A DNA stretch of 64,000 bases from positions 682,001-746,000 of the forward strand of contig MU008181.1 of NCBI GenBank assembly GCA_010909165.1. Reading direction: 5' to 3'. Under the pieces are notes generated by a model, which did not search any database, was not told the DNA's origin, and worked only from the letters and a program-made list of their open reading frames with translations. Both the position numbers and the translations under genes were made by a program. The stretch comes from Anthoceros angustus. Taxonomy: Eukaryota > Plantae > Anthocerotophyta. Positions 9,986-32,102 of the stretch are shown here, in pieces (the stretch's first letter is position 1; each line of letters begins with the position of its first letter).

Positions 9986-10038
9986 TGCGGAGAAGAGGGC
10001 ATGATTTATAATAGGTGACCCCACAGGGCCATGGAGAT

Positions 10039-10146
10039 GGCAATGGATGGCGCATGTGTATTGATCCGTCTCAAGGAAGCTAGACTTTGGAAGGCAATGG
10101 ATGGCACGCCATCTGAGTATTGATCCGTCTCAAGGAAGTTAGACTG
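10039..10146. repeat. ~50-bp imperfect tandem duplication
   Basis: ggcaatggatggc…gtattgatccgtctcaaggaag(c/t)tagact occurs twice in tandem. Confidence 0.8.
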
Positions 10147-11650
10147 TGCAGTTCCAATGAACCCAAGTCTGAATGTCACTCCTTGAAGGGAGGATAGGCC
10201 TTTCATTATTGTCCATGTGAATGTGAGCAATTAGATCGTTGTAATGACTTTTACATCCTATTATAAACATGATATTTCCTACAATCTAAGCTCTAATCTA
10301 ATCTTGTTCCATCTCTATAGCAGGATTTTATTTTATTATTCATGATGTTGTACTGAGTATTGCTTTATTTTGTTATTCATGACAATATAATGAGCATTGC
10401 TACGCAGCTCATCTCGCATTAGTTCATATTGTTGTTAGGTTAAACAACTCTGCATAGGATTGACCATCTAGTTAACTAGTTGGCAAACAAAATTATATGT
10501 CATATGGATACTAATCATTGATATATCTATATATATACACACACACACACCTACATGAAACAAAAATTGAGTCTTATTCACTTAGTAACACAAGCATCTG
10601 GTTTAAACTTTGAGTCTTGATAACAACCCCTCCAGTCTTGATAACAACCCCTCTAGATAAATCAAGATGTTTTATGTATATCAAAATAAAATGTTTCTTA
10701 ATGGTTGATTGCTTCATGTGTTAGCAGCTTCTTGTTTGGAGTCTATAGTCTTTTGTTGGTGCTACTTCCATGCTATATGTTTCTTGTGATAATTTTCTTT
10801 GTATTTCATTGGGCCTTATTAGTGCCTTGTCTCTTGCACTAATCTGGGGCACACCTTTGCAAATTCAATTTACTTATAATTTCTTGTAATTAACCAAAAA
10901 TAATACATCATGGATGACTTGTTAGTTGTTGTAGTTGGAGGATTTAACGAAATAATTTAATACCTACTCACCTTGATCTCATTAAGTCTCATTACAAATC
11001 AAACCCAGTTTAGAAAAACCTCCCACTCATTTGAACTTAAAAAAAAAAAACATACCTAGACTTCACAAAATGGGAAAAAATGGCTTTCAAGCTAAACTAG
11101 CTTCATAATACTCAAGCCTGAAAATCAAGAAACAATTTAACTTGAGACCTTTTCTCTGCAAGAGAATGCATCTATGGGTTAGAGCACATAGATCCTCAAC
11201 ATACATCACTCCTCAAGAGCAACATAGAGTGGACTTATCCAAATCTTAGATTGTAAAACGTATAGTAGTAAAGTCAATCTATGAAGTAGATATGTTTATC
11301 CTTTTTAACCTTCATCTAAAAGGTCAATCTATGTACATGCTTCTTTAGTTTTCAACCTCCTCTTCTATAATGATAGGTCTTCTCTTTCCAATTAAGTTAA
11401 CTATCAAACCTTGACCAGTCAATTTTATATACTCGAGAACTGGAGGCTCTTTATGGTCTTGATAACAACAAGCTAGCTAATCTACAAGTATGCTCTAGTG
11501 AGGATACTACACATCATGATGACAAAAATATACACACATAACAGTAAATTGATTGAGATAAAGAAACTTCTATCATTGATGCTAAATGCATGTCTACATT
11601 AATGACGTGAATCTGCTACAAGATTATTTATGAAAATAAAACTATGAGGA

Positions 11651-12097
11651 CTAAGCACTTGTAAATTTTGTGACAGCTTTAGTTCCTTCGGATATGGCAT
11701 GCTTTGCAAGCTCTCCCGGAAGAGTGAGCCTTACAGCTGTTTGGATTTCACGAGAGGTTATGGTTGGCTTTTTGTTATACCGCGCTAACCGTGAAGCTTC
11801 CAATGCTAATTTATCAAAAGTGTCGCACATGAAACTATTAAGAATGTCCATAGCTCTACTGGAGATGCCCGTATTTGGATGCACTTGTTTGAGGACTTTG
11901 TAGATATAAATTTTATAAGTGTCTAAGCTTTTCTTTGACTTCCTTTTCTTTATGCCTTCGGTAGAGGGAGGTGGTCTCAATCTTTTCTTAATAGCCTTTC
12001 GATGCTCACTTCCCGTAGCATGAGGTTCAGGCGTTTTGTCTAAAGATGTCGTGACACCATGTTGTTCTACATCCTCGGCACCATCCAGAGCAGACAT
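11651..12097 (-). CDS. H2B: Divergent histone H2B, intronless
   Basis: Histone fold [88 protein letters not shown]. First true ATG is at 12097; the N-tail is atypical. Confidence 0.95.
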
Positions 12098-13034
12098 ATT
12101 AAATCTCAAGTAGAAATATAAAATTCAAAATCTTGAACCCAAGAAATCATGGGAAAACATAAGTATCCTTTTGATGCGAACTTGACACTTCACTTCTTTA
12201 ACATCTCAAACATCAATGAGATCAATCTGTAGATAAGATGGGCATAATTGAGAGCACTAACAAGAATCCGCATAATATGGTTTACTTTTTTTTCTCAAAA
12301 CCGCATTACAGAAATGGATATATTTGTCCAAACCAAAAACTGATGGATGTCACATTCAACGCATTTGTCACATGAAATTGGAGAAGAGGGCAAAGTAGAT
12401 AAAAGCAAGATAGAAATAGGTCACGGTGTTCATGTCAAAGGTGAAAGCTCGCCGATGTGCTTAGCGCGCTAAATAAATAGATGGGAATACCAATATGCCT
12501 CACCACATGTTTGTCCGAGTAATATGAAATTTGTTTCCCTTTTTGTGGGGTAGACACGTAGCGCCTCTCCACACCACTCACTCCATTGCTTTGTTTGTAT
12601 GTGACACGGGTGGAGAGTTGGGTGCGAAACGCGAAACCGAAACCGGCGAGGGAGGAGAGAGAAAAGGCGGGGTTATAGGGTAATTCCCGCATTTACCAGA
12701 AATTTTAAATGGGTAGGGCCGTTTTGTGGTCGCCGACGTTCCTGGCCTTGTGTTTTGAAGGGGATGGGTGGATTGGGGACAGAGGGGCAGGATCGTTGGG
12801 TGGTGCGCCTCGCAGCCTTCCTTCCCTTCCCTCAGCTCCCTCCTGATAGCCAATGCGGAGCAGCGCGGACGGGCCGAGCTCGTGTTCCGCTTGCGCTCGC
12901 CTGTGAGAGCATCGGGTCGGGTCGGGCCGGGCCGGGTGGAGAGCAGTCGCGCCGGGTGCGGGATCGGAGGCAGGCGCGCATCCTCCCTGCACCCATCCCC
13001 CGCCTCGCCTCGGCCTTGGGGGTGGGATCGGAAG

Positions 13035-15036
13035 ATGGGGAGCCTGCGGGTGCTGGTGCCCAGCACGTTGCTGGGAAGCAGCGGGCAGGCGGAGGCCTGG
13101 AGGGCCGAATTGGGCACTGCCCGGCCGGTGCTTCCGCGCAGGTGAATGTGCCACGGCGTGGTTGTTCGTTCCTGCTGCTGCTGCTGCTGCTGCTGGAATT
13201 GATGTGTGGGTTGCGGCAGGGGCGGGAGGGGAATGCGGGCGGCGCGAGATGCTGCGTGCGGGAGGCGGGGCCGGCGGACGGGGACGAGGGTGACGCGGGC
13301 GCCAAGAGCAGCCTCATTGCGCGCGATGGCGTGGGAGGAGGGGTGCTGTCGGCCGCCATGCTGGCCACCATGACGTGCGTGTGCACCGAGGGGCGGAGGC
13401 CGCGGTGGCGCGCCACGCGGCCGTGGAGCAGAGGCGGCGCGAGGCCCTGCAGCTGCAGACCCTGCAGGCGGCCAAGCGCGGGGGAGCTCGGCGGGAGATC
13501 GGCAAGGCCGCCGTCGGCAGCGTGGAGTGGGAGTACGGCAATTCCTGCGGGCCTGGCACCTGGGGCTCCGTCTGCGCCGCGGGCCGCGTGCAGTCGCCGG
13601 TGAACTTCGAGATGAACAAGGTGCAGAAGGGGGAGAAGACGATGCGGGATCTGGTGTTCGACTACGGCCCCGTCTCGCCCACCTTCCTCAACACGGGGCA
13701 CGGTACAATGCAGGTGAGTTGAACGCACGGTGACGGAAGATGTGAGTGAACCCAGGCCCTGCTTCCTTCTCGTTTTCATCAAAGGTGAGGAAGTGAGAGG
13801 AGATTACATACCACCAACAGTGCCGTAGCTGGCGTTGGGACGGACATGCCGGTGTCGAGCTTGGATGATAACTGAAAAGCTGGCAGGTAAATTTTCCAGG
13901 TGGTCGCAACAAGCTGAAGATCGGCGACAGGACGCTGGACCTGCTCCAGTTCCACTTCCACACGCCGTCTGAGCATTCCTTCAATGGGATGCACCACTGC
14001 ATGGAGGCTCACTTGGTGCACGGTGAGATGGGAGTCCTTGGAGAGAAGGGGCTTTGCTGACATGTTCCATGTCCTTCCAGTGACTGACTTGCTCTCGTTG
14101 TCGTTGTCGTTGTCGATGAAGGTGACCCTCAAACCAAGTCGCTGGCAGTGGTCGGGTACGTTGTAGACGGTAGACGTTGGCATCTGTCCTGTGGCACAGG
14201 TAGGTAGGTAGGCCTGAGAGTTAGGATGTGTGATGTGGGGGGTGGCCGTTGCCATGCTTGTGGGAGCAGGGTGCTGCTCGATGCCAAGAGCCGCGTCAGC
14301 GCCAACAAGGCTCTGCAAGCTGCACTGGAGTACTCCCCCAAGGAGCACTACAAGACAGCGTGAGTGAGGCGTACCTGTTCTGCTGCTGCTGGCTCGCTGC
14401 TCTCTCGGTGAACCGGCAGTGACACGGTGACTTGGGTTGTTGCTGATGCTGCAGGCAAGGACCGGATAACTTCAGTCTTTCGCCCTCCCTCCTGCTCCCG
14501 TCGGCAGGAAGAATTGTAAGTAGCAGTAGCAGTAGCAGTAGCAGTAGCACAGAGATTGATGAGCTGAGAAGCAGCAGTGCCACTTTGGTTGAGTGGGATA
14601 ACACCCATCACGGTCTTCGCTTGGCACTGGCAGCGGAAGAAGCGGGGATACATGTTCTACCAGGGCTCTCTCACAACTCCTCCTTGCTCCGAGGGAGTGG
14701 AGTGGTATGTCATGGGTGAGTATCCCGTACCATGCTTCCCATCCCTCATAATTCCTGCCATCTCCCATGGCATCTCCTCCCAGGCACTTTCGTACGTAAC
14801 TCCCACTCCTCTGTTGCAGAAACGCCGGTGAGCATCTCCTACGCACAGGTGGTGGAGTTCATGAGATACGTCGGAGACTCCAGAACTTTGGCCTTGAACA
14901 CCGTAAGTCCATCCCTTCCCCTCATCCACTGCTTCCTTCCTGCTGCCTGGTGCTCACATCTGTATTGAACGGCATGCAGAGGCCCGTCCAGCCCCTGGGC
15001 GAGCGGACGGTATTCAAGGGCCCCATGCTGGCCTAA
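13035..15036 (+). CDS. CAH3: Alpha-carbonic anhydrase, CAH3-like (putative plastid/thylakoid lumen), at least 8 exons
   Basis: Spliced product: WEYGNSCGPGTWGSVCAAGRVQSPVN…FLNTGHGTMQ|VNFPGG…LLQFHFHTPSEH…MEAHLVH…YQGSLTTPPCSEGVEW…VEFMRYVGDSRTLALNT|RPVQPL…; stop at 15034-15036. Zn ligands (HFH, EAH) are intact. The 5' exon linkage is unresolved. Confidence 0.9.
14520..14549. repeat. (GTAGCA)n microsatellite in a carbonic anhydrase intron
   Basis: About 5 tandem copies immediately after the gtaag donor. Confidence 0.85.
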
Positions 15037-17708
15037 TAACCCAGCTTTCCCCAGCCCACATGCCAAGAAGCGTGAAGTGTGCGAGAGCCGCTGAACCAGG
15101 TTCCAAGAAGCAGAGGTGTCCGGCAGGACAAGGAACAAGAGGCGAGTGCAGGCCGAAACAGCAGACTCCACTGCCCTGCATGGGCCCCGCACCTTGCCCG
15201 GGGCCCAGCTGTATGTACACTCCATCCCGGGCCGCCCGCTCCCCTGTAGGCTGTGAAATCAGCACCCCCGCATACTTACCTACATCACATCCGCATAGTA
15301 TACAGTATATCCCTCCTTGTAACTCTCCACACTATCCGCCCATGGCGGCCAATCAAGTGTTAACCCTATCTCCTCTTGCTGCCACTCCCGGCAAACGCGA
15401 GCAGAAAGATCGAGCGTTTGGTGAGCAGGTCATGCCCGATTGAGCACGCTAGGGCGGCCTCCCATCTCACCCCGCCTTCTTGCATTTGCACAGTACTCTC
15501 CTGCACGTGGACAACACAAACCGCTCTTGCTGCCGCACAGTACAGCATTAGGCTGCATCCGATTCCCATGAACCGCCTCGGGACTTGACATGAGTCGGCA
15601 TCCAATCGCTCTCCATGTCAGACCAGCGCAGATAAGGATGCCATGGTGCAAACACCGAGTTGCTGTCCAAGTGTATGAAATGTAGAAGCCTACACTGCGC
15701 GTTGCCTTGGCCTCCAAGTTCTCCTCCAATCTTCCAGACGCGGTGTCATCTCCCGCTGCCACCACTCTTTCGCCTCTTTTCTCTTCTCCCTGTTTTTCTT
15801 TCTTTTCTCCTCCTCCTCCTCCTCCTCCTGCACCTTCCGCTGCGCGCATATCTCCCGGCTCGCCTTTTAATGGCAACTGCGGCAGTGACGCAGCAACAGC
15901 AACAGCAGCGGCACTGCCGGCGGCAATTGGCCCAACAAGCCTCCTGTTGCACGCTAACCTCAACGTGTGTGCGAGCTGTCCTCTCTTGCTTTCCGTCGCA
16001 CTTTCCCTCCCTTGCTTCAGCCTTCAGCCATCTCCCGCTTCCGCTTCCGCTTCCGCCATGGACAGACCTCGCGTGTGCCGGCCCGTTCCGTTCGCTCCAC
16101 GTCGCGTTCCGTTGGAGGCGCCACGTGGAGCGATCTCGGCCCAGGAGTGTAGGGTTAAGGTATTTTCTCCCGTAGCCGGAGCGGGGAGGAAAGTCAGAAA
16201 CCCTGGCTGGGGTTGGGTCCAGCCCATCGCACATCCATCCGTTTCACCCTACGTCGTAACGACGGTGACCTAATTTAGCGATGGCGTTATAATCAGCGCT
16301 GTTGCGAAAGTGTATAAAATCGGAACACAGCAACGCCAACTCTCTTCCCCTACCTTTTCTGGAACACCTCGAGGTTGGGTTCGGGTACCTCTCTTCGCCA
16401 GGCCAGCCTTCCCCCTTCCCCCTTCCTTGCCTTGCCTTGCCTTTCCTTCCCTGCCGTGCAGTGCTTGCCTGCGGATGTATATAGCCCGGCTGCGCCCGCG
16501 TCGGGCCCCCCCTGGCCGCAATTCGACACTGCTTCTGCCAATTACGTCTCGTCCCCGTTCCGCCTCTCCGCTGGTAGCCGCAAATTCCCTGCCGGCCGCG
16601 CCGGGCGCCTGGATCCCGCCTCCTGCCGCTGCTGCCGCTGTTTGTTGCCTCTGAGGCTGAGGCTGCTGTTGCCGCTGCCGCTGCGAGTGCTCCGTCGGTG
16701 ATGCCCGGCCCCTTCCGCCTCCGCTGGTGGTGGTGGCTCGCTGCCCTGCGCCGCGCCGGCTCCGCCATGGCCTGACTCGCGCGGCTGCGCTCATGAGGGT
16801 CGAAACATCGCGGCCTGCCGGCCCCGTTCGCCGCACTGCAGCGGCGGGAACTCTTCTGTAGCTCATGGCCGTGAGGCGAGGAGTCGGAAGGAGAGGACTT
16901 GCCAGTTTGGAATTTTAGATATGGAGCAGGAGCACCAGGCTTGATTCGTTCCTGCGTTGTCGCGTTTTTGCGTTTGTTTTCCCTCCCTGGCCGCACTTGC
17001 GTGCCCGGCCTTGCCTGCCTGGCATGTTGTCGCAATTCGGGGTACGCCGTGCCGCAGTGGCCCCGTCGTGCGCCTCTTCGCCGACGGTGGCGGCAATTGG
17101 AAGGTAAGGATTTGCTTCAACTGGTACTGTAGCTTCTTCGCTGTGCTTGCCACGGTAGAGCTGGTGTGGTGCGGTTTGCTGCCTGGTGTGTTACGATGTG
17201 TGCTTGGTTTCAGTGTTTTGGCACCGGTGCATGCCGCAATGACGAAGCTGTGTGCCGTGCTCTGCAGGCCGGGCCCCGTAAGGGGCCTAGGATTTAAGTG
17301 ACACTCTTGCTTGGAGGCAGCTTGGTGTTTGAGCAACTCTGTCCACGGCAAGAGCCTCCGAGGTAAGGTGTTGTTCTGTGCTTTCGCGGGACGGGACAGG
17401 GAAGGGGAGGAACAAGTGTAGGATTTGGACGGGAAAATAGCCGAGACGGGGAAGGATTGTTCTTCCCTGTATATGAGTATTCTCTTTTGCGGTTATGTAT
17501 ATACGAGAACACGCAATTGATGCCGTGTTTGTGCTTCTCCAGGAGAGCTGCGATACACATCTCATTGTCGCTCTCGCTCAGCAACCGGACAGAAGAAGAC
17601 TGGTGCGCTGCGTCTGCGCCTGTTGTGACGCTTGTGCACCTTTGGTTCAATCGGATTTCATGACCGTGCTGTGGGGGACGTGCCGCAGGAACAGGTTCTT
17701 CAGCCAAC

Positions 17709-20700
17709 ATGTGGATTCACGTCGCCGAGAACGGCCACTCGTTCGAGTTGGAGTGCTGGGGTGACACTACCGTGGACCTGGTGAAGGCCTGTCTCGTTAA
17801 TCACACCGGAATCGCAGTGGCTAATCAGATCCTTATTTGCGGCGCTGCACGCCTGGATTCGCAGAGGACTCTGGCTCATTACGATCTTCCTGATGATTCA
17901 CGCCGTGATGATGCACGCCCTGTCGTGTTGTACAATAAGCAACGGCTCCATGCGGAGGCCCCGCCTCCACCACCGGAAGAGGTGGAGAGATATGATCCCC
18001 ATCTGCCTTCGCCTTTGTCGGCAACAACTGGTCACCCCTTGGATGATTCTCCTGATCCGGCCCTCAAGGTCCTTCCTTATTACGAAAGTCAGTTCACGTA
18101 TCATCTTCATAAGGGGAACGCTATTTTGGCTGCTAGCACGGCAAGGTTGGAGGTTTCCAAAAGGCTGCTCAGGGAAATACAGGTGCAGGAAATTGCGCTA
18201 GAGACTGGCCGAAAGAGCCTGCAACAATACCACTATGATAGGGCCGTCGACCCGCAGTTCAATGAGTTCATCAACGCGTACAACAGGCAATATGACCAAC
18301 ACGCAGAGATCTTGCGGAACCTTGACAGAGACTTAAGAAGGCTCAAGGCTTGCAAGCTTCATCCTGCTCTGAGATCAGAGGGGCGCACCACTTTGCTTGA
18401 CTGCCTCGATGAAGCAGGCGTCCGGGGATTGGCAGGTGATTGTGCTACTTCTCTTAAGCAGCTTTATGCAAAGGTTACGGAGAGGAAGTGCTCGTTAGCA
18501 GACTTGCAGCGGAAGGTACAGGAGCTGCTAAAGCTTCAACCTGTGGTTGATGTGCGAGCACTGGAAGCTCAACTGGAGGAATATTCTTCTCTCCTCGTGG
18601 AGCAGTCGAGCATAAGACAGACCCTCAGGTTCCTCACTGGTGCCCTTGCTGTTTTGATTTTCTCCTTGTGGTCACGGTGTCTCAGATCTTGTTTATGTGC
18701 AATTTCCTTCTCATTGTTTGAAGGATGACTGCTTGCATTTCTAACTCTCCACTGAATCGTGCTACATTGTGGTGTTTTTGTCTGATCTGCAGTAAGGATG
18801 TCAATACTATCAAGAATTTTGTAGATGAGCGATTGAACAGCCAGTATTCTTCTCAACGTTCTCACGATGGGGCCTCCAACCGTAACTATATCAGACCACA
18901 TGATGCGGTGTCTGCTTATCGACCTATGCATGAAATTCATGAGTCCAGACTGCTTCCAAGAATGTCAAAGTTGGATTCTCAATTTGCGCAGCTTTTGGAG
19001 CACTGCGTGAGGTGTAAGAATGCAATGAGTCTTTGTGTTCACACCCGCATGCAAGGTGTGGCTGCTATACAGGCGAGCACTAAGGACATAAGGCTTGAGC
19101 TCTTTGGCTACAGAGAGGCAATGAACAGGGAGGAGGAAATGTTTCAGAGGTTGAAAAGGGTGCGGAAGGTGGGACTGTCTTACAGAGCTTGTCTAGCTGA
19201 GGTAGTTCGGAGAAAGAGCTCCATAAAATTATATATGGGTCAGGGGGGTCAGTTAGCTGAGAAGATGGCCCGGACGAGGGCGACAGAGGTGGCCCGACGC
19301 GAGGCATTTCAGAAGAATCACGGGCAATTCCTTCCCTGGGAGATTATTCAGGGAATGGGACTCTTTGGGAATCCCAGTCAGTGCGTTGTAAATATTGCTC
19401 CTTTTGATATGCATTTGCTTGATATAGGTGTAGCTGATATCGACCGTTACTCCCCAGAGCACTTGAAGGGTCTATATCGTAGTGAACTCCAAACTGCAGG
19501 CTCCGGGGAAGAACAGCAGCGAGGGGAGTCTAGGGATAACAATGATGTAGATACAGAAGATGATGGTAGCAATGATGAGATAGCTGGTACAAGCCGATTG
19601 GAGGTGGAGAACACATATCTTAAGTCTCAGCTTGCTGCCGCTGTGGCGATCATCTGCAGCATGGATCCAGAGATGGAGGTTGAGGATGCTGGACAGGGCA
19701 AGGAGCTTGGTGATAGCGTTGACAACTCAGTGGGAAGTAGCAGACTTGCTCTTCGGAAAACGACAGAGGCTTTGAGGTTAAAGGACGAGTATGCCAAGCT
19801 TCTTAAAAAAGAACTAGCCACAAAAGAGGCGCAGTGCTTGTCCTATGAGAAGCGAATAAAAGATCTCGAAGTATGCAACCAGCACTTGTACATTGAAAAT
19901 CTCAAACCTTTTCCTCAAGAGCAGGTCCATCCTTTAGCAGGCGGTGATGGTACAGACTCAGATGTCTCAGAAGTGACAGGTCTAGGGAGGATGGGTGCAG
20001 CCCCTGAGCCAATGGATGAAGGTGTGAGCAGTGAGGTTGAGTGTGGTCAAAGGCAACTTGGTCCATCAAGTACAGTGGAGCATCCTTGCACTCCAGGTGA
20101 GCAGACTGGCCGAGTGTGGGAAGGAGATGCGACAATGTGTGATGTGTCTGCTGCAGGACTTGCTGTTGATGCTGCCATGGTTGACTGTCGGAAGGAAAAT
20201 GCAGCCTCCAGTGAGAATTGGGTGTCAGACAGGTGTACCGAGCCTGCAGAACAAGCGTATGTAGGTAGATGCCCTGAGCTGCTCATTCCCAAGTTTGCAG
20301 GAGAGACAGTGGAATGTGGAGAGGGCTCAGAAGCACCAGTATCCCCAGCCGTGGAGAGTGTAACAGTAGCAGTAACAGATGCTCCTGTGTCAGTCAGCGA
20401 GGCAGACGACCAGTTAGCATCTTTGCATTCTGCACTGGCAGAAAAAACTAGGCAGTGTGAATTGGCAGAGGCCCGTGCCAAGACAGCGGCAGAAGCTGCG
20501 GATCGTCTTCATGCAGAGCTGGAAAGAACTACAGCACATGTCAATGAATGCCAGGTATGCTTGGTAGTGTCGACTTTGTCTCCGTGGTTACAGATAATGG
20601 AGTGATTAACTGCCTTAAGTTGAAATTGTTAAAGGAGAATTGTGCTCACTTGGAGAATCGGCTACACGACGCACTACAAGAAGCAAGAACTCACCGTTGT

Positions 20701-21916
20701 GCAGCTGAGCGACGAGCTGCCGAGTATCAGTCTCTCCGCGCTTCAAGTGTAAGGCTGTGTGGCCTGATGGAAAGACTGAGGAACTGTATCTCTGCTCCTG
20801 GAGGAGCAAATGCATTTGCAGAGTCTCTACGGGCACTTGCTATCTCTGTTTCAAGGTGAGTTGCAGAAGCTTTGATTCTCCAAATGTGCAAAACAAGCAC
20901 AGGAAGTTCTTTGCTAACCTTGATCAGTTCTGGTTGTGGTAGTATCAGTGATGCAGGCGATGATTCGGCCGAGTTTCGTGCATCCATCAGGGTGTTAGCA
21001 GATAAAGTGGGAACTCTTGCTCAGCAACGAGCTGAGTTGTTGGAGCGTTGCAACATTGCAGAGAGTGCACAAACTGTTCTGACGAAAGATCTGGAGGAAA
21101 AGTCTGAGTTGTTGAAGAATTTCTATGCTAAACGGAAGGCGGAGAAGCAGGTATTCAATCAGCCACTGTTTTCAGACTTTTCAGCTTGAAAGCCTGAAGA
21201 ATACCTACACTCCCCTTTGCGTCTACCCCCTCTTCAACTGTTTTGACATTTAGACACAGACATATGGGCCCCATCCCAGAGCCGGTGGAAGAACTCACCT
21301 GACTGTGTTGTCTTCGTCCTCCCCTTCAGTAGTACTTGTTTTTTTAAAGTAAAGTTCAGAGTGGCGTCCTTCCCATTGAGGCTCTTGGTTGTTTACCTGA
21401 TCGAGAGACATGGGGCTTGTGCTTGTATATTAGTTCCTCTGTTCCTTACAGGTAGTTCTGCGCAAGGTGGACTTGGTGTTAACATGCCGCTGTTGCGGGG
21501 TCCTGGATCAAGAGTTGATAGTCGATGCTTTTGCATGGCAGGCAAGCAAGGAGAAGATATGCTTCACACGCTTCAATGTGCATGAGCTTGCGGTGTTTAT
21601 GCCAAATGCTGATGGTCATTACGAGGCTATAAATGTGAACTGTCCAAACTACTACCTGTCTGACGAATCTATTGCATTGTTTTTGGAGCATCCTCCAAAT
21701 TCACAACAGTATATTGTGGGTCAAATAGTACACATTGACCGGAATGTGGCAAGGCAACCACCTGACGGTGGAAGTCCCCCGTCCGGGAATGGCAGTGGCA
21801 GTGAGGCAATTGCAGGAGGGGGTTCTAAATGTCGCACTAACCCTTATGGCTTACCCGTTGGAACAGAGTATTGTGTTGTGACAGTGGCCATGGCCCAGAT
21901 TTTACTCGTGCCTTGA
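17709..21916 (+). CDS. ATG11: Autophagy-related protein 11 (ATG11/FIP200-like), multi-exon
   Basis: N-terminal HVAENGHSFELEC ubiquitin-like start, ATG17-like region (YRACLAEVVRRK, LFGNPSQCVVNIAPFD) and coiled coil. C-terminal ATG11/claw domain: KEKICFTRFNVHELAVF…GHYEAINVNCPNYYLSDES…YIVGQIVHIDR…NPYGLPVGTEYCVVTVAM. Confidence 0.95.
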
Positions 21917-25933: not shown

Positions 25934-28375
25934 ATGTCCAGCTTGCCCATTCCTGGAGCCGCATCAGCCTCTACTTCCAAGCATCTTCCTCAGCCCCCGC
26001 CCCTTAGCCATGGACTTTCAGCAGGTGTCAGCTCCATCGTCCTTCATCCTCCCCCGGGAGATCAGGGAGACGAGGGGCTGGAGCGAGGATGCAGGTCCAT
26101 GGGTGTCGATGGTGAAGGAGGTGAGGAACAGCTCGACGGCGGCCGCAAGAAGGTGCTCAATCCTTTTGCGCAGGAGTTTGTCCCGGGGCCGCCTCGCCAT
26201 CAGCCCGACGCCGGGGAGGGCTCTAGAGCAACAAGCAGGGTCCCTGATGATGGTGTGAGCCAGGGAGATGAGCCAGGGAACCACATTGCGGATGCCATTT
26301 CCAATCCTCCTGCGGACCACGGTGGTGGTCTCACCAGCACCTTTGCTGGAAATGGCAGGGGTTCTCGGAGCAGAAGAGGAAATTTTCAGGCGCCTGCGCC
26401 TGCGCCTGCTGCACCTTCAGGAGGACGCCGAGGGCAGATGTTAAATGCTAACCACTTGTTGAATTTTCAGTATGATCGTTTTCAGCGGCCACCCCCTCGA
26501 GCTGCTCCACCGCAGCGTGGCAAGCAGAAACAGCGGGCTCAGCCCTACAACAAGGAGCTTTTCTTGCAGGCCAACTTCCGGTTTCTGGTGTCGGATTTGG
26601 GTGACTATGCACAGAATGCCAGTGACCCCGACAAGATGTTGGAGTGGGAAGATGTGGCAGCGGTGAACGTGTTAGCACCTCAGCCTCTGCAGTGCCCCAT
26701 CTGCCTGGATAGTCCACCTGTGTGCCCTCAGATCACGTCTTGTGGTCATACGTTTTGTTTCCCCTGCATTCTGCGGTATATGATGATGGGGGAAGAGAAT
26801 CCGAGGGGGGACTACTGCAAGAAGTGCCCTCTGTGCTTTGCAATGATCTCTTGCAAAGAGATGCGCACGGTGTCAGTACACAGCGTGAAGCAGTACGAGG
26901 TTGGTGATATCCTCAAGTTCACTCTGCTTGTTCGGCCAAAGGACTCCATCATACCTTTTGAGAGGAGAGGGAGGCGGAGCTCTCTGTCATACAGCACGGA
27001 CGGGGATTGCCAGATTTTCTCCAAGTTTTCCCTTACCTCGGATGCAGAGCAAACTACGAACAAGGCTCTGTCAGAGCTGAAGGAGTGGATGGAGCGAGTG
27101 CAGGCGGAGGGTTCGAACGAGGATCTTGAGTTGCTGCCTTATGGATTGGCAGCAACTGAGCAAGTGCAGCGAAGGAAAGTGGCTTGGGGGGAGCATCGGG
27201 CATCGGAGTTCTTGAGCAGTAGCCCTAATGTGAGGCAGAGGATTATTGCACAAGCCAAAGCAGGCGAACAGCTTGCAGAGACGGTGGGAAAGCTTGACTT
27301 GGAGGGCCAAAGCCAAAGTCCAGCAACTGGTAAAGGAGGATATGCAAGCAAGGTAGATGTTGCAGCAGAGACAAAGGCAGCCCTGGCAGAGTTAAGAGAG
27401 AAGGCTGGTTGGGTGTACGAGAGTGCTTTCTCCGATGATGAAGATGGTGGCAAACCAAAGCTGCATGTGAGCAGCCCGAAGGAGCGAGATCTGATTCACT
27501 GGGAGCAGTGGGTTCCAGGTGATGGGGTAGAAGTGGCAGAAAGCAAGGAGGCAGAGCCCAAGAAGGATACCGAAGACGGAGAGTTGTACTACTTCTATCA
27601 GGCGGCTGACGGGCAATCATTCATCCTCCATCCACTCAACATGAAGTGTCTTCTGCAGCATTTCAGGACTTACGAGTCTCTCCCTTCCAGTATACAAGTG
27701 AAACTGGTGGAGTTGGAAGCTGTGACCCAGACAGAAGCAGCAAGGAAGCGATTCCGATATCTGAGCCACCTTCCCTTGACAACAACCTTCTACCTTTGCG
27801 AGGTTGATCTGAGCGACCAGATTCCGGTCACAGCCTTCCAGCCTTTCTCAGAAGAGCTGCGGATCAGGCAGAACCGACGCCAGCGGCGTCAGCAGTTGGA
27901 GAAGCAGCAGAGAGCAGAAGAGCAGCGGCTAGCAGCTACTGCATCCACCAAGTCTCAGCGATTTCCTCATGCATCAGACTTCGTTCCCATTGCAAAGTCT
28001 GCAAATGCATCTGACAATTGTGAGGCCCTGGACACTGAGGCAGTGCCACCAGACAGTGCCCCGTCACCAAGTCCCCCAGTCTTGGAAGAACGGAAACTGT
28101 TTTCCAGTGTTGCCAAACTGGGTTATGCTTCAGGACATGACGCACCCACTCTCTCTCAGACCAAGGCAGTGGATGCTTCTTCCCCTTCCCAGTCATCTGA
28201 AACAGGTGGAAGCAGTGGCACAACCCCACTTACTTTTGCTGCCATTATCCAAGCTCAGGTTAATGCAAAGCCCAGCCAGGAGGAGGGTGAAAGGATCCGG
28301 GTTTCTGGCAGTAGTAAGAAAGGGAAGAAGGGTGTGAAAGTGCTCATGTCAACAGCTGGGGGACGACGATACTGA
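25934..28375 (+). CDS. RNF10: C3HC4 RING E3 ligase, RNF10/Mag2-like, uninterrupted 813-aa CDS
   Basis: Motifs NANHLLNFQYD, YNKELFLQANFRFLV, CPICLDSPPVCPQITSCGHTFCFPCILRY…CPLC, YYFYQAADGQSFILHPLNMKCL, RKRFRYLSHLPL and a KKGKKGVKVLMSTAGGRRY C-terminus. Confidence 0.9.
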   Translation: MSSLPIPGAASASTSKHLPQPPPLSHGLSAGVSSIVLHPPPGDQGDEGLERGCRSMGVDGEGGEEQLDGGRKKVLNPFAQEFVPGPPRHQPDAGEGSRATSRVPDDGVSQGDEPGNHIADAISNPPADHGGGLTSTFAGNGRGSRSRRGNFQAPAPAPAAPSGGRRGQMLNANHLLNFQYDRFQRPPPRAAPPQRGKQKQRAQPYNKELFLQANFRFLVSDLGDYAQNASDPDKMLEWEDVAAVNVLAPQPLQCPICLDSPPVCPQITSCGHTFCFPCILRYMMMGEENPRGDYCKKCPLCFAMISCKEMRTVSVHSVKQYEVGDILKFTLLVRPKDSIIPFERRGRRSSLSYSTDGDCQIFSKFSLTSDAEQTTNKALSELKEWMERVQAEGSNEDLELLPYGLAATEQVQRRKVAWGEHRASEFLSSSPNVRQRIIAQAKAGEQLAETVGKLDLEGQSQSPATGKGGYASKVDVAAETKAALAELREKAGWVYESAFSDDEDGGKPKLHVSSPKERDLIHWEQWVPGDGVEVAESKEAEPKKDTEDGELYYFYQAADGQSFILHPLNMKCLLQHFRTYESLPSSIQVKLVELEAVTQTEAARKRFRYLSHLPLTTTFYLCEVDLSDQIPVTAFQPFSEELRIRQNRRQRRQQLEKQQRAEEQRLAATASTKSQRFPHASDFVPIAKSANASDNCEALDTEAVPPDSAPSPSPPVLEERKLFSSVAKLGYASGHDAPTLSQTKAVDASSPSQSSETGGSSGTTPLTFAAIIQAQVNAKPSQEEGERIRVSGSSKKGKKGVKVLMSTAGGRRY

Positions 28376-29972: not shown

Positions 29973-32102
29973 TCAATAAGGCCGACCCAGGCCATGCCTG
30001 TCAGAGGTAGGCGCCCGTCCATGGCGTTGGTCTCTGAAGTGCCGAAGGAGAGCTGAAGCCTGAAGGGAAAAAAAAGCGTCAGTGCCTCAGTGCAGAGGAC
30101 AATTCATCTATACATACTTGTGGGTGAAAAACGAAACACAAGGCCAAGGATTTACTTTTTCTTTGGCACGAGCAGTGCCAGATTGAGAAAGGGCGTGCAA
30201 TGGTGGTATAGCTCCTTCTCGCAAGACCATAGCTCGATGCTTGTTGCTAACCATACATAGCTGGAGAAGGGCAGCTGCAGCATTCTCCTTTCCTCGAGGA
30301 GACCCAGCCTCAACAACCTCCACAAGTGCAGGAATGCCTCCTTCATCTCCAATAGCAACCTTACCCTCAGGTATAGTTGCCAAATTGGCCAACACAGCCA
30401 CTGCCTTGTCCACCATGCCAGCGGCAGGATCCGACATGAGCTCAACCAGGGGCTTGATAGCCCCGTGCCGCACGATCCTGGCCTTGTTCTCATGGTAAAT
30501 GGACAGGTTGAAAAGTGCAGTGGCTGCATCCTTCTTTCCCCTCGGGGAACCGTTGATGAGCAGATGCACCAAGGGCGGGATGGCACCAGAAGCTCCAATA
30601 GTCACCTTGTTGTCATCCATCACCGACAAGCTGAACAGCGTAGCTGCAGCGTTCTCCATAGCCTCCGGGTTTCCGACCTTGAGCACATGCACTAGAGGAT
30701 CGATAGCACCCGCAGACGCGATCTCCGACTTGTTGATGTCGTTGATAGATAGGTTAAGCAACGCAGTGACAGCATTCTCCTGCGTCTTGGCATCAGGAGA
30801 CCTCAAGAGCGCAACCAGGGGCCGCACAGCTCCGGAATTGGCAATAGTGATCCGGTTCTCCATGTTATACTTGGCCAGCAGCCGCAATTCAGCCGCAGCA
30901 GCCCGGTGCACCTCAACAACCTCCGACTGCAGATCCAGCACCAATTGATCCACCCTCTTCTGCGTAGCATCGTCCGTGCCGGGCATAACATCCGGCAAAG
31001 CCGCGGGCACGATCCTCGGCATGGAATGCTCCCGATCCTCCCCGCGCCTCCTCCACACCATGGACGGCCTGTCCGGCACCCGCGCCGGAGACCCCGGCTC
31101 ATCGCTGAACCCCGGGGACGCCGCCGGCAGCTGGTGATGCGCGGACGGAGGGACTCCGTCCAGCTCCCCCGAGAAATCACTGAAAGAAAAGGCACCGTTC
31201 ACCGAGCGGGGAGAATCAGCGTGCACCGCGTCTGCGGCAGCAGAATTCTGCGCATCCTCCTGGCTGGAAGACGCACTGGATCCGGACGACGTACGGCTGT
31301 GGTCCACAAGGAAATCCACTCCCACCGCTGCCCCCGCATGCGAGTGGCCATGGCCGGCATCCAGACTCCCAGCGGCCGCCCCGTTCTCCACAGAATGGCC
31401 ATGGCCGTGGGTGGTGCTGTGCTCCTGCACCGCCTCGGCCTCCTCCGCGGCCCTGCCGCTGGTCCTGGCCCGCAAGACCGCAACCTGCACGGGCCTGCCT
31501 CCCTCCGCGTCCTCCGAACCCGCGCGCGCCTCCTCCTGCTCCTCCAGCGGCCCCGCGGCGATACGCTCCTCCACCTCCCCCTTCCCGGACGCCACGGGGC
31601 TGAGCGGCCTGGGCGGGAGCGGCCCTAGCCCAAGCCCGAGGCTCAGCAGCCGCGCGGGCTCCGGCAGCGGCACACTGTTGGACTCGCACCAGCTGGCGAT
31701 GAGCGCCTTGACGGTGTAGTTAGGAATGAGGTTGGTGTGCGTGAGCGCCTGGCGCGTCTTGGGACAGGTGGTATTGCCCTGGTCCAGCCACTGCTGGATG
31801 TAGGCGCGCTCGTACGTCTGCCCCGACGCCACAATCACAGGATCCGACATGAGCTCCAGCGAGAGCGGGCATCGGAAATCCGGGGGAATGGCCTTGCCGA
31901 GCGGCAGGCCCGCGCCGGGCCCGGGCCCGGGGCCGGAGCCGGGGCCGGGGCCGCCTCCCGCTCCCGCCGCATCCATGAACCCTCGCCGCGCGATCTGCTG
32001 CTGCTGAGGCTGCTGCTGAGGCGGCGGCTGCTGCTGGTGATGGAGAGGCTGCTGATGCTGATGCTGGTGCTGATGCGGATGCTGCTGGCTCACCGCCGCC
32101 AT
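29973..32102 (-). CDS. PUB4: U-box/ARM-repeat E3 ligase, PUB4-like, 2 exons
   Basis: U-box IPPDFRCPLSLELMSDPVIVASGQTYERAYIQQWL followed by ARM repeats (LRLLAKYNMENRITIANSGAV…, GSPRGKENAAAALLQLC). Donor after RAKEK at 30155; last exon from 30059 reads ASALLRHFRDQRHGR…. Confidence 0.88.

What the first reader, a model, noticed from the sequence alone, without database searches (positions are those of the whole stretch)
13035..15036. CAH3-type (thylakoid-lumen, pyrenoid CCM) alpha-carbonic anhydrase in a land-plant genome
Seen: an intact alpha-CA with Zn-binding HFH and EAH, SEH and GSLTTPPCSE. Its signature stretches (W-x-Y-G…GPxTW, LNTGHGTMQVNFP, EFMRYVGDSRTLALNTRP) closely follow my recollection of Chlamydomonas CAH3 (LNTGHGTMQVNFPAG, DFMRFVGDNKTYATNTRP) rather than the secreted angiosperm alpha-CAs. 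The N-terminus lacks an ER signal peptide. It has an Arg/Ser/Ala-rich start and a hydrophobic TCVC…AEA segment reminiscent of the CAH3 lumen signal. Established: CAH3 converts lumenal HCO3- to CO2 for Rubisco in algal pyrenoids. Inference: this plant keeps a pyrenoid-type CO2-concentrating component, as reported for hornworts; outside hornworts this would be more surprising.
Basis: partly seen in the sequence, partly recalled or inferred. Interest (0 to 1): 0.8.

Follow-up and report, generated by a model that had tools for sequence, protein, structure and literature searches.

The report
Hornwort CAH3 carbonic anhydrase gene
This is the hornwort copy of CAH3, the carbonic anhydrase that algae send into the thylakoid lumen to release CO2 for Rubisco; it is real and transcribed, but it was already described in Anthoceros hornworts in 2020 and 2024.

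Summary
The gene at 13035-15036 (+) is a nine-exon alpha-carbonic anhydrase. A spliced 1504-nt transcript contig confirms every GT..AG intron. All catalytic motifs are present.

Its first CA exon hits only Chlamydomonas CAH3 (4XIW) in the whole PDB. In a tree it sits inside a bryophyte clade, next to Zygnematophyceae, within the green-lineage group that holds Volvocales CAH3.

The precursor has a twin-arginine lumen signal (RR, hydrophobic stretch with CxC, AxA) that is shared across this group.

By an eye count it is about 90% identical to the published Anthoceros agrestis CAH3. That protein has been localised next to pyrenoids. So the window comes from a congeneric hornwort, probably A. angustus, whose CAH3 was reported in 2020.

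- The genomic exon 2 lacks five G's in G-runs relative to the transcript, so the window as given is frame-broken upstream of the CA domain. These are most likely assembly errors.
- CAH3 orthologues also exist in pyrenoid-less mosses and liverworts, so the gene alone does not prove a pyrenoid CCM.

Earlier scan notes on other DNA of this genome had already called it a hornwort and seen similar frame breaks.

Verdict: correct reading, already known, low novelty.

The parts
13027..15383 (+). Extent of the transcript contig (mRNA, both ends possibly incomplete)
   Evidence: Run X1, one 1504-nt contig. It has no mismatches, is spliced at all eight introns, and includes about 347 nt of 3' UTR.
13035..13141 (+). 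Exon 1: start codon and first part of the stroma-targeting presequence (residues 1-36)
   Evidence: ATG at 13035 and GT donor at 13142.
13220..13713 (+). Exon 2: rest of the transit peptide, twin-arginine lumen signal, linker, and first 66 residues of the CA domain up to GHGTMQ
   Evidence: The PDB search with this exon finds only 4XIW/4XIX (CAH3), E 3e-11.
13228..13393 (+). Stretch with four G-run sites where the window lacks 5 G's relative to the transcript (at 13228-31, behind 13332, behind 13339 and behind 13389); frame-breaking as given
   Evidence: tables 4 and 5c. Frames. The corrected ORF and 23 matches A. agrestis CAH3.
13322..13410 (+). Twin-arginine (Tat-type) thylakoid lumen signal: RR76-77, hydrophobic stretch 78-92 with CxC, then AEA/AVA at 96-101 (approximate genome coordinates)
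   Evidence: RR + CxC + AxA are conserved in the aligned full-length relatives, from Mesostigma to liverworts.
13411..13518 (+). Basic, probably helical, linker of about 36 residues between the signal and the CA fold. It is absent from the moss, liverwort and algal orthologues aligned here.
   Evidence: Alignment and profile alignment. It is nearly identical in A. agrestis. The sister protein P0080 has an unrelated Ala/Pro-rich insert at the same place.
13519..15036 (+). Alpha-CA catalytic domain (residues 138-382) over exons 2-9, with the stop codon. Zinc ligands are His225, His227 and His244. Also present: proton-shuttle His198, Glu231, Thr323/324 and the Cys156/Cys327 pair.
   Evidence: Exon-level Pfam PF00194 hits.
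13887..14022 (+). Exon 3 (VNFP...QFHFHTPSEH...EAHLVH)
   Evidence: PDB ranking: CAH3 48 bits, dioscorin 27.9 bits, CAH1 19 bits.
14122..14155 (+). Exon 4
14270..14359 (+). Exon 5
14455..14515 (+). Exon 6
14634..14715 (+). Exon 7 (GSLTTPPCSEGVEW)
14820..14902 (+). Exon 8 (EFMRYVGDSRTLALNT)
14980..15036 (+). Exon 9 and the TAA stop

Best explanation
This is the nuclear CAH3 orthologue of an Anthoceros hornwort, probably A. angustus.

Shown here:
- It is transcribed and spliced from nine exons into a 382-residue precursor.
- Residues 1 to about 60 are Arg/Ser/Ala/Gly-rich.
- A twin-arginine signal follows (RR76-77, hydrophobic 78-92, AxA at 96-101).
- Then comes a basic linker of about 36 residues and a complete alpha-CA domain with all zinc and proton-transfer residues and the conserved cysteine pair.

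Inferred from the family:
- The first part takes the protein into the chloroplast stroma.
- The Tat (delta-pH) pathway carries the folded enzyme into the thylakoid lumen, where the signal is cut after AEA or AVA.
- In the acidic lumen the enzyme dehydrates bicarbonate to CO2, which diffuses to Rubisco in the adjacent pyrenoid subunits, as proposed for A. agrestis CAH3.

The frame breaks in the window's exon 2 are assembly errors in G-runs, not biology.
For: - Gene model and expression: one spliced contig, no mismatches, eight GT..AG joints.
- Intact ORF after the transcript's five extra G's.
- PDB: exon 2 hits only CAH3. Exon 3 gives CAH3 48 bits against 39 for the best bacterial CA, 27.9 for yam dioscorin and 19 for CAH1.
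- Nearest relatives by BLASTP are bryophyte and streptophyte-alga proteins at 45-54% and Volvocales CAH3 at 46-47%.
- Tree: winCA+P0080 100/99, bryophyte clade 99/98, sister to Zygnematophyceae 89/87, all in the clade holding Volvocales CAH3, with bacteria outside.
- It scores 360 bits on the CAH3-type profile. Marchantia, Ceratodon and Sphagnum score 370-377 and the listed bacterial CAs at most 250.
- The RR/h-region/AxA signal is conserved across the family and is documented for Chlamydomonas CAH3 (PMC10814762).
- About 90% identity by eye to the printed A. agrestis CAH3 sequence, including the presequence.
- That protein has a lumenal transit peptide, is abundantly expressed and forms puncta beside pyrenoids. 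A second group also found it in the chloroplast.
- A. angustus retains CAH3 and LCIB/C.
Against: - Lumen import, the cleavage site and enzyme activity were not tested for this protein.
- In A. agrestis the two groups differ on the exact place: puncta between pyrenoids versus overlap with the pyrenoid matrix plus stromal granules.
- No knockout exists in hornworts.
- Orthologues in pyrenoid-less mosses and liverworts show that the protein has a role that does not need a pyrenoid.
- My tree holds no angiosperm alpha-CA and no CAH1. I had no seed sequence for them, so that comparison rests on PDB scores and on the published trees.
- The species is inferred, not shown.
- The 90% identity is a count by eye against a machine-read PDF that drops letters.
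Confidence: 0.88

Rival explanations
1. It is a lumenal CA whose main job is not the pyrenoid CCM but an older housekeeping role. That role would be supporting the donor side of photosystem II or lumenal bicarbonate/proton buffering, as also proposed for Chlamydomonas CAH3. This rival partly overlaps the best explanation.
For: Orthologues with the same twin-arginine signal occur in Marchantia, Calypogeia, Sphagnum, Ceratodon, Mesotaenium, Netrium and Closterium. The four bryophytes in that list have no pyrenoid. The CAH3 review describes a PSII-supporting role (abstract). In A. agrestis, expression does not respond to CO2 level.
Against: A. agrestis CAH3 concentrates in puncta within 500 nm of pyrenoids. 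[quoted passage not shown]
Confidence: 0.25
2. It is a pseudogene: the frame breaks in exon 2 are real in this individual and no functional precursor is made.
For: As given, the window has no open frame from the ATG at 13035 into the CA domain.
Against: The transcript contig is identical at every other one of 1504 positions. It differs only by G's added in G-runs, and these restore one long ORF. The restored residues match A. agrestis CAH3. A. angustus was assembled from Nanopore reads with wtdbg and Pilon, a route prone to such errors. An earlier scan note reports similar frame breaks in another gene of this genome.
Confidence: 0.03
3. It is a secreted or apoplastic alpha-CA of the usual land-plant type that merely resembles CAH3 in a few motifs.
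For: It belongs to the same Pfam family (PF00194), and a cysteine pair is typical of secreted alpha-CAs.
Against: There is no strongly hydrophobic N-terminal segment: the 11-residue hydropathy mean over the first residues peaks at only 1.4. The internal RR/h-region/AxA signal is shared with CAH3. The angiosperm alpha-CA relative dioscorin and CAH1 score far below CAH3. No named angiosperm protein appears among the best 120 hits of the CAH3-type profile. Its tree position is in the CAH3 clade. The 90%-identical A. agrestis protein is in the chloroplast.
Confidence: 0.02

Closest known systems
Anthoceros agrestis CAH3 (gene model ...4293.1; Robison et al. 10.1101/2024.06.26.600872, Supp. Fig. 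6B; also 10.1101/2024.06.24.596764)
   Same: About 90% identical overall and about 93% in the CA domain, by an eye count against the printed sequence. It has the same presequence, the same RR...CVC...AEAAVA signal, the same linker (ARHAAVEQRRREALQLQTLQ is identical) and the same catalytic residues.
   Different: About 39 substitutions or small indels, mostly in the first 60 residues, around residues 122-140 and in the last 12 residues. It is therefore another species, not A. agrestis itself.
Chlamydomonas reinhardtii CAH3 (PDB 4XIW/4XIX)
   Same: It is the only PDB hit of exon 2 and the top hit of exon 3. It has an alpha-CA fold with the His triad, a Cys pair, and a bipartite presequence with a twin-arginine motif, a hydrophobic region and an AxA site. 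Volvocales cluster members are 46-47% identical to the window protein.
   Different: The hornwort protein has a longer presequence and a basic linker of about 36 residues before the CA fold. In Chlamydomonas the enzyme sits in tubules that cross the pyrenoid. In A. agrestis it sits beside the pyrenoid subunits.
CAH3-type proteins of other bryophytes (Marchantia MPTK1_4g18060, Calypogeia fissa CAM6086812, Sphagnum, Ceratodon KC19_8G018400)
   Same: They are 51-54% identical, fall in the same starred bryophyte clade and have the same twin-arginine signal.
   Different: They lack the linker, and these plants have no pyrenoid.
Angiosperm-type alpha-CAs (proxy: yam dioscorin, PDB 4TWL) and periplasmic Chlamydomonas CAH1 (3B1B)
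   Same: They share the Pfam family and the zinc site.
   Different: Their scores are far lower: exon 3 gives 27.9 and 19 bits against 48 for CAH3. They use secretory targeting, not plastid/lumen targeting.

Membership tests
Alpha-carbonic anhydrase (PF00194) | Three zinc-binding histidines (His94/96/119 in human CA II numbering) | tested here: met
   His225 and His227 lie in QFHFH and His244 in EAHLVH. These are invariant columns of the family alignment.
Alpha-carbonic anhydrase (PF00194) | Proton-transfer and gatekeeper residues (the His64, Glu106 and Thr199 equivalents) | tested here: met
   His198 in NTGHG, Glu231 in SEH and Thr323/324 in SLTTPPC.
Alpha-carbonic anhydrase (PF00194) | Significant match to the family profile | tested here: met
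   The exon pieces hit PF00194 at E 4e-3 and 2e-4. These are below the gathering score only because they are pieces. The full corrected protein scores 360 bits on a profile of PF00194-bearing relatives.
CAH3 orthogroup (thylakoid-lumen alpha-CA of the green lineage) | Falls in the clade that holds Chlamydomonas/Volvocales CAH3, apart from other alpha-CAs | tested here: met
   Tree: bryophyte clade 99/98, whole green clade against bacteria 92/54. PDB rankings. Caveat: angiosperm alpha-CAs and CAH1 were not in the tree. Published trees agree.
CAH3 orthogroup (thylakoid-lumen alpha-CA of the green lineage) | Bipartite presequence with a twin-arginine motif, a hydrophobic region and an AxA cleavage site | tested here: met
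   RR76-77, hydrophobic stretch 78-92 (hydropathy peak 1.9) and AEA/AVA at 96-101. Conserved across the family. Chlamydomonas reference.
CAH3 orthogroup (thylakoid-lumen alpha-CA of the green lineage) | Cysteine pair that forms the activity-relevant disulfide (Cys90-Cys258 in CAH3) | tested here: met
   Cys156 and Cys327 lie in the invariant Cys columns. Formation of the bond itself was not tested.
CAH3 orthogroup (thylakoid-lumen alpha-CA of the green lineage) | Located in the thylakoid lumen | not testable with these tools
   Only the 90%-identical A. agrestis protein has been imaged. It is in the chloroplast, as puncta beside pyrenoids.
Pyrenoid CO2-concentrating mechanism component | Needed to supply CO2 to Rubisco at low CO2 | not testable with these tools
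   No hornwort knockout exists. Orthologues in pyrenoid-less bryophytes show that the gene is not diagnostic of a pyrenoid.

The most novel reading that the evidence does not exclude
The basic, probably helical segment of about 36 residues between the Tat cleavage site and the CA fold (residues about 102-137) may stay on the mature enzyme. It is nearly invariant between two Anthoceros species and absent from moss, liverwort and algal CAH3. It could act as a hornwort-specific tether that concentrates CAH3 in the thylakoid patches next to pyrenoid subunits. That would explain the punctate pattern seen in A. agrestis.
Probability: 0.12. Interest if true: 0.5.

Novelty: already known. Interest (0 to 1): 0.15.

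Why it matters
CAH3 is one of the three parts (with LCIB and bestrophin channels) that models name as the minimal set for a pyrenoid-based CO2-concentrating mechanism. [quoted passage not shown] This window only re-finds that gene in a second Anthoceros species.

Three points are of practical use:
- The public assembly is frame-broken in the GC-rich exon that encodes the lumen signal, so an automatic gene model here could be truncated or wrong.
- The twin-arginine signal is conserved from Mesostigma to hornworts.
- The gene also exists in pyrenoid-less bryophytes, so its presence should not be read as proof of a CCM.

Tried and rejected
- Reading the N-terminus from the genome alone fails. No single frame links the ATG to the CA domain, and I found no plausible extra intron. 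The transcript explained it.
- An exact-sequence look-up of the neighbouring U-box protein, meant to name the organism, found nothing.
- The representative search with exon 2 found no near-identical protein; the best hit was 52%. So hornwort proteomes are not among those representatives, and the species could not be read from database names.
- A second cluster look-up, meant to find a land-plant secretory alpha-CA as a seed, returned only unnamed, bacterial, nematode and prasinophyte entries. Angiosperm alpha-CAs and CAH1 are therefore missing from my tree.
- The full corrected protein has no reference, so it could not be given to the Pfam, structure or word-search tools. I used exon pieces, scripts and close relatives instead.
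- I did not compute the identity to A. agrestis CAH3, to avoid typing a long sequence. I counted it by eye.
- RNA editing as the cause of the extra G's was rejected. To my knowledge, hornwort editing is organellar C/U exchange, not insertion of G in nuclear mRNA.

Full report
**What is in the sequence**

The stretch 13035-15036 on the + strand holds a nine-exon gene. The exons are 13035-13141, 13220-13713, 13887-14022, 14122-14155, 14270-14359, 14455-14515, 14634-14715, 14820-14902 and 14980-15036. The eight introns are 77-173 nt long and all GT..AG. Exon GC is 66%, against 50% for the whole window.

The exon pieces hit Pfam PF00194. The window holds no second copy.

**Transcript evidence and a correction**

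One public run (X1, organism A) holds a 1504-nt contig that lies on 13027-15383. It has no mismatches and skips exactly the eight introns, so it derives from spliced mRNA. A second run from another study shares the intron-2 joint.

The contig differs from the window only by five extra G's. All are in G-runs of exon 2: one in the run at 13228-13231, one behind 13332, two behind 13339 and one behind 13389 (tables 4 and 5c).

Without them the window has no open frame from the ATG into the CA domain. With them there is one ORF of 382 residues.

Everything else is identical and the restored residues match a published orthologue (see below). I therefore read the missing G's as homopolymer errors of the assembly, not as a pseudogene.

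**Anatomy of the precursor**

| Residues | Feature |
|---|---|
| 1 to about 60 | Rich in Gly, Ala, Arg and Ser, with no strongly hydrophobic start |
| 76-77 | Twin arginine |
| 78-92 | Hydrophobic stretch (GVLSAAMLATMTCVC; 11-residue hydropathy peak 1.9) |
| 96-101 | AEA and AVA, candidate cleavage sites |
| about 102-137 | Basic, probably helical linker |
| 138-382 | CA fold |

Within the CA fold, the zinc ligands are His225, His227 and His244. The fold also carries His198, Glu231, Thr323/324 and the cysteine pair Cys156/Cys327.

The RR, the hydrophobic stretch with CxC and the AxA are aligned and conserved in the full-length relatives from Mesostigma and Chlorokybus to liverworts and mosses. 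The same layout is documented for Chlamydomonas CAH3, whose cia3 mutations lie just after the twin arginine (PMC10814762).

**Which alpha-CA it is**

- With exon 2 as query, the only PDB hit at E up to 0.01 is 4XIW/4XIX, the Chlamydomonas CAH3 structure, at E 3e-11.
- With exon 3, CAH3 leads at 48 bits. The best bacterial CAs reach 39 bits, yam dioscorin (an angiosperm alpha-CA relative) 27.9 bits and periplasmic CAH1 19 bits.
- A search of 1.84 billion representatives with exon 2 gave 77 hits.
- By BLASTP to the corrected protein, the best full-length relatives are:
  - an unnamed Logan protein P0080, 50% over residues 58-378
  - Sphagnum, 54%
  - Marchantia, 52%
  - Calypogeia, 52%
  - Ceratodon, 51%
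  - Mesotaenium, 48%
  - the Volvocales CAH3 cluster, 46-47%
- The corrected protein scores 360 bits on a profile of these relatives. That is level with the moss and liverwort members (370-377). The bacterial alpha-CAs listed score at most 250.
- No named angiosperm protein was among the best 120 hits of that profile.

**Tree**

A maximum-likelihood tree (41 rows, LG+C20) puts the window protein with P0080 at 100/99 support. The pair sits inside a bryophyte clade with mosses and liverworts (99/98). That clade is next to Zygnematophyceae (89/87). All of these lie in the green-lineage group that contains Volvocales CAH3, with bacterial and animal CAs outside. The branching follows the species tree, so this is a vertically inherited orthologue.

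The limit of this tree is that I had no seed to fetch angiosperm alpha-CAs or CAH1, so they are not in it. The PDB scores and the published trees cover that gap.

**Whose genome it is**

Supplementary Fig. 6B of Robison et al. prints the A. agrestis CAH3 protein. I compared it by eye, allowing for letters dropped in the machine-read PDF. It differs from the window protein at about 39 positions. That is about 90% identity overall and about 93% in the CA domain.

The lumen signal is nearly identical and the first 20 linker residues are identical. A fast-evolving presequence this similar means a congeneric species, not A. agrestis itself.

Several points make A. angustus the likely source, though I did not prove the species:
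- A. angustus was assembled from Nanopore reads with wtdbg and Pilon, and its genome was reported to retain CAH3 and LCIB/C (PMC7027989).
- The window has 50% GC and short introns.
- Run X1 dates from 2019.
- An earlier scan note names A. angustus for this genome.

**How it most likely works**

Shown here: the gene is transcribed and correctly spliced. It encodes a catalytically complete alpha-CA behind a bipartite plastid/twin-arginine presequence.

Inferred from the family and from the A. agrestis work:
- The precursor is imported into the stroma.
- The Tat pathway moves it into the lumen, and the signal is cut after AEA or AVA.
- The enzyme dehydrates lumenal bicarbonate to CO2 near the pyrenoid subunits.

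In A. agrestis the tagged protein is abundant and forms puncta within 500 nm of pyrenoids. A second group also sees it in the chloroplast, overlapping the pyrenoids. No knockout exists.

**Rivals**

- *An older, pyrenoid-independent lumenal role (PSII support or buffering).* This is a real possibility alongside the CCM role, because orthologues with the same signal exist in bryophytes without pyrenoids.
- *A pseudogene.* The transcript argues against this.
- *A secretory alpha-CA.* The signal, the score rankings, the tree and the localisation of the 90%-identical protein all argue against this.

**Novelty**

CAH3 orthologues were reported in A. angustus in 2020. In A. agrestis the sequence, the lumenal transit peptide, the expression and the localisation were published in 2024. 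Both reports state that other non-angiosperm land plants keep the gene.

- The assembly errors hide the twin arginine.
- A hornwort-side linker lies between the signal and the fold. It is nearly invariant between two Anthoceros species, and P0080 has an unrelated Ala/Pro-rich insert at the same place.
- The histone(-)/CAH3(+) gene pair and the exon layout are conserved in the genomic contig that carries P0080's gene (L002). That contig probably comes from another hornwort.

Scan notes on other DNA of this genome had already called it a hornwort.

Noticed in passing
window 11651-12109 (-) and L002 2313-2765 (-): A core histone gene (PF00125) lies head-to-head upstream of CAH3. The same histone(-)/CAH3(+) pair, with collinear CA exons, is on a 19-kb Logan genomic contig (SRR33208241) of the unnamed organism that encodes P0080. 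The histone is 89% identical in translation.
   Followed up: partly
window 17709-21916 (+): This is an ATG11-like autophagy gene, with a ubiquitin-like start, an ATG17-like domain and an ATG11 C-terminal domain. Its two large ORFs (17709-18728 and 18725-20605) abut in different frames, with the ATG17-like domain split between them. The cause is either a short intron or another assembly frame break.
   Followed up: no
window 30108-32102 (-): An intronless 664-residue plant U-box/armadillo-repeat E3 ligase (PUB type). No identical protein is on record in the public collection.
   Followed up: partly
window 25934-28375 (+): An 813-residue ORF with a C3HC4 RING finger and no other recognised domain.
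   Followed up: no
window 13174-13196 and 14519-14550: Trinucleotide microsatellites, (CTG)n in intron 1 and (GTA/GCA)n in intron 6 of the CA gene. The read tool skipped both as repeats.
   Followed up: no
window 10001-12000: An AT-rich stretch (GC 0.35) directly upstream of the GC-rich histone/CAH3 pair (GC 0.57-0.60 over 12-18 kb).
   Followed up: no
P0080 (L001 203-1648): The sister protein of the window's CA has an extra C-terminal tail of about 65 residues, much of it Thr and Ser. It also has an Ala/Pro-rich insert where Anthoceros has the basic linker.
   Followed up: no
database hits P0011, P0015, P0018, P0034, P0037: Proteins of 1283-2170 residues made of 4 to 14 tandem alpha-CA domains turned up among the relatives of exon 2. 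Their origin was not looked up.
   Followed up: no
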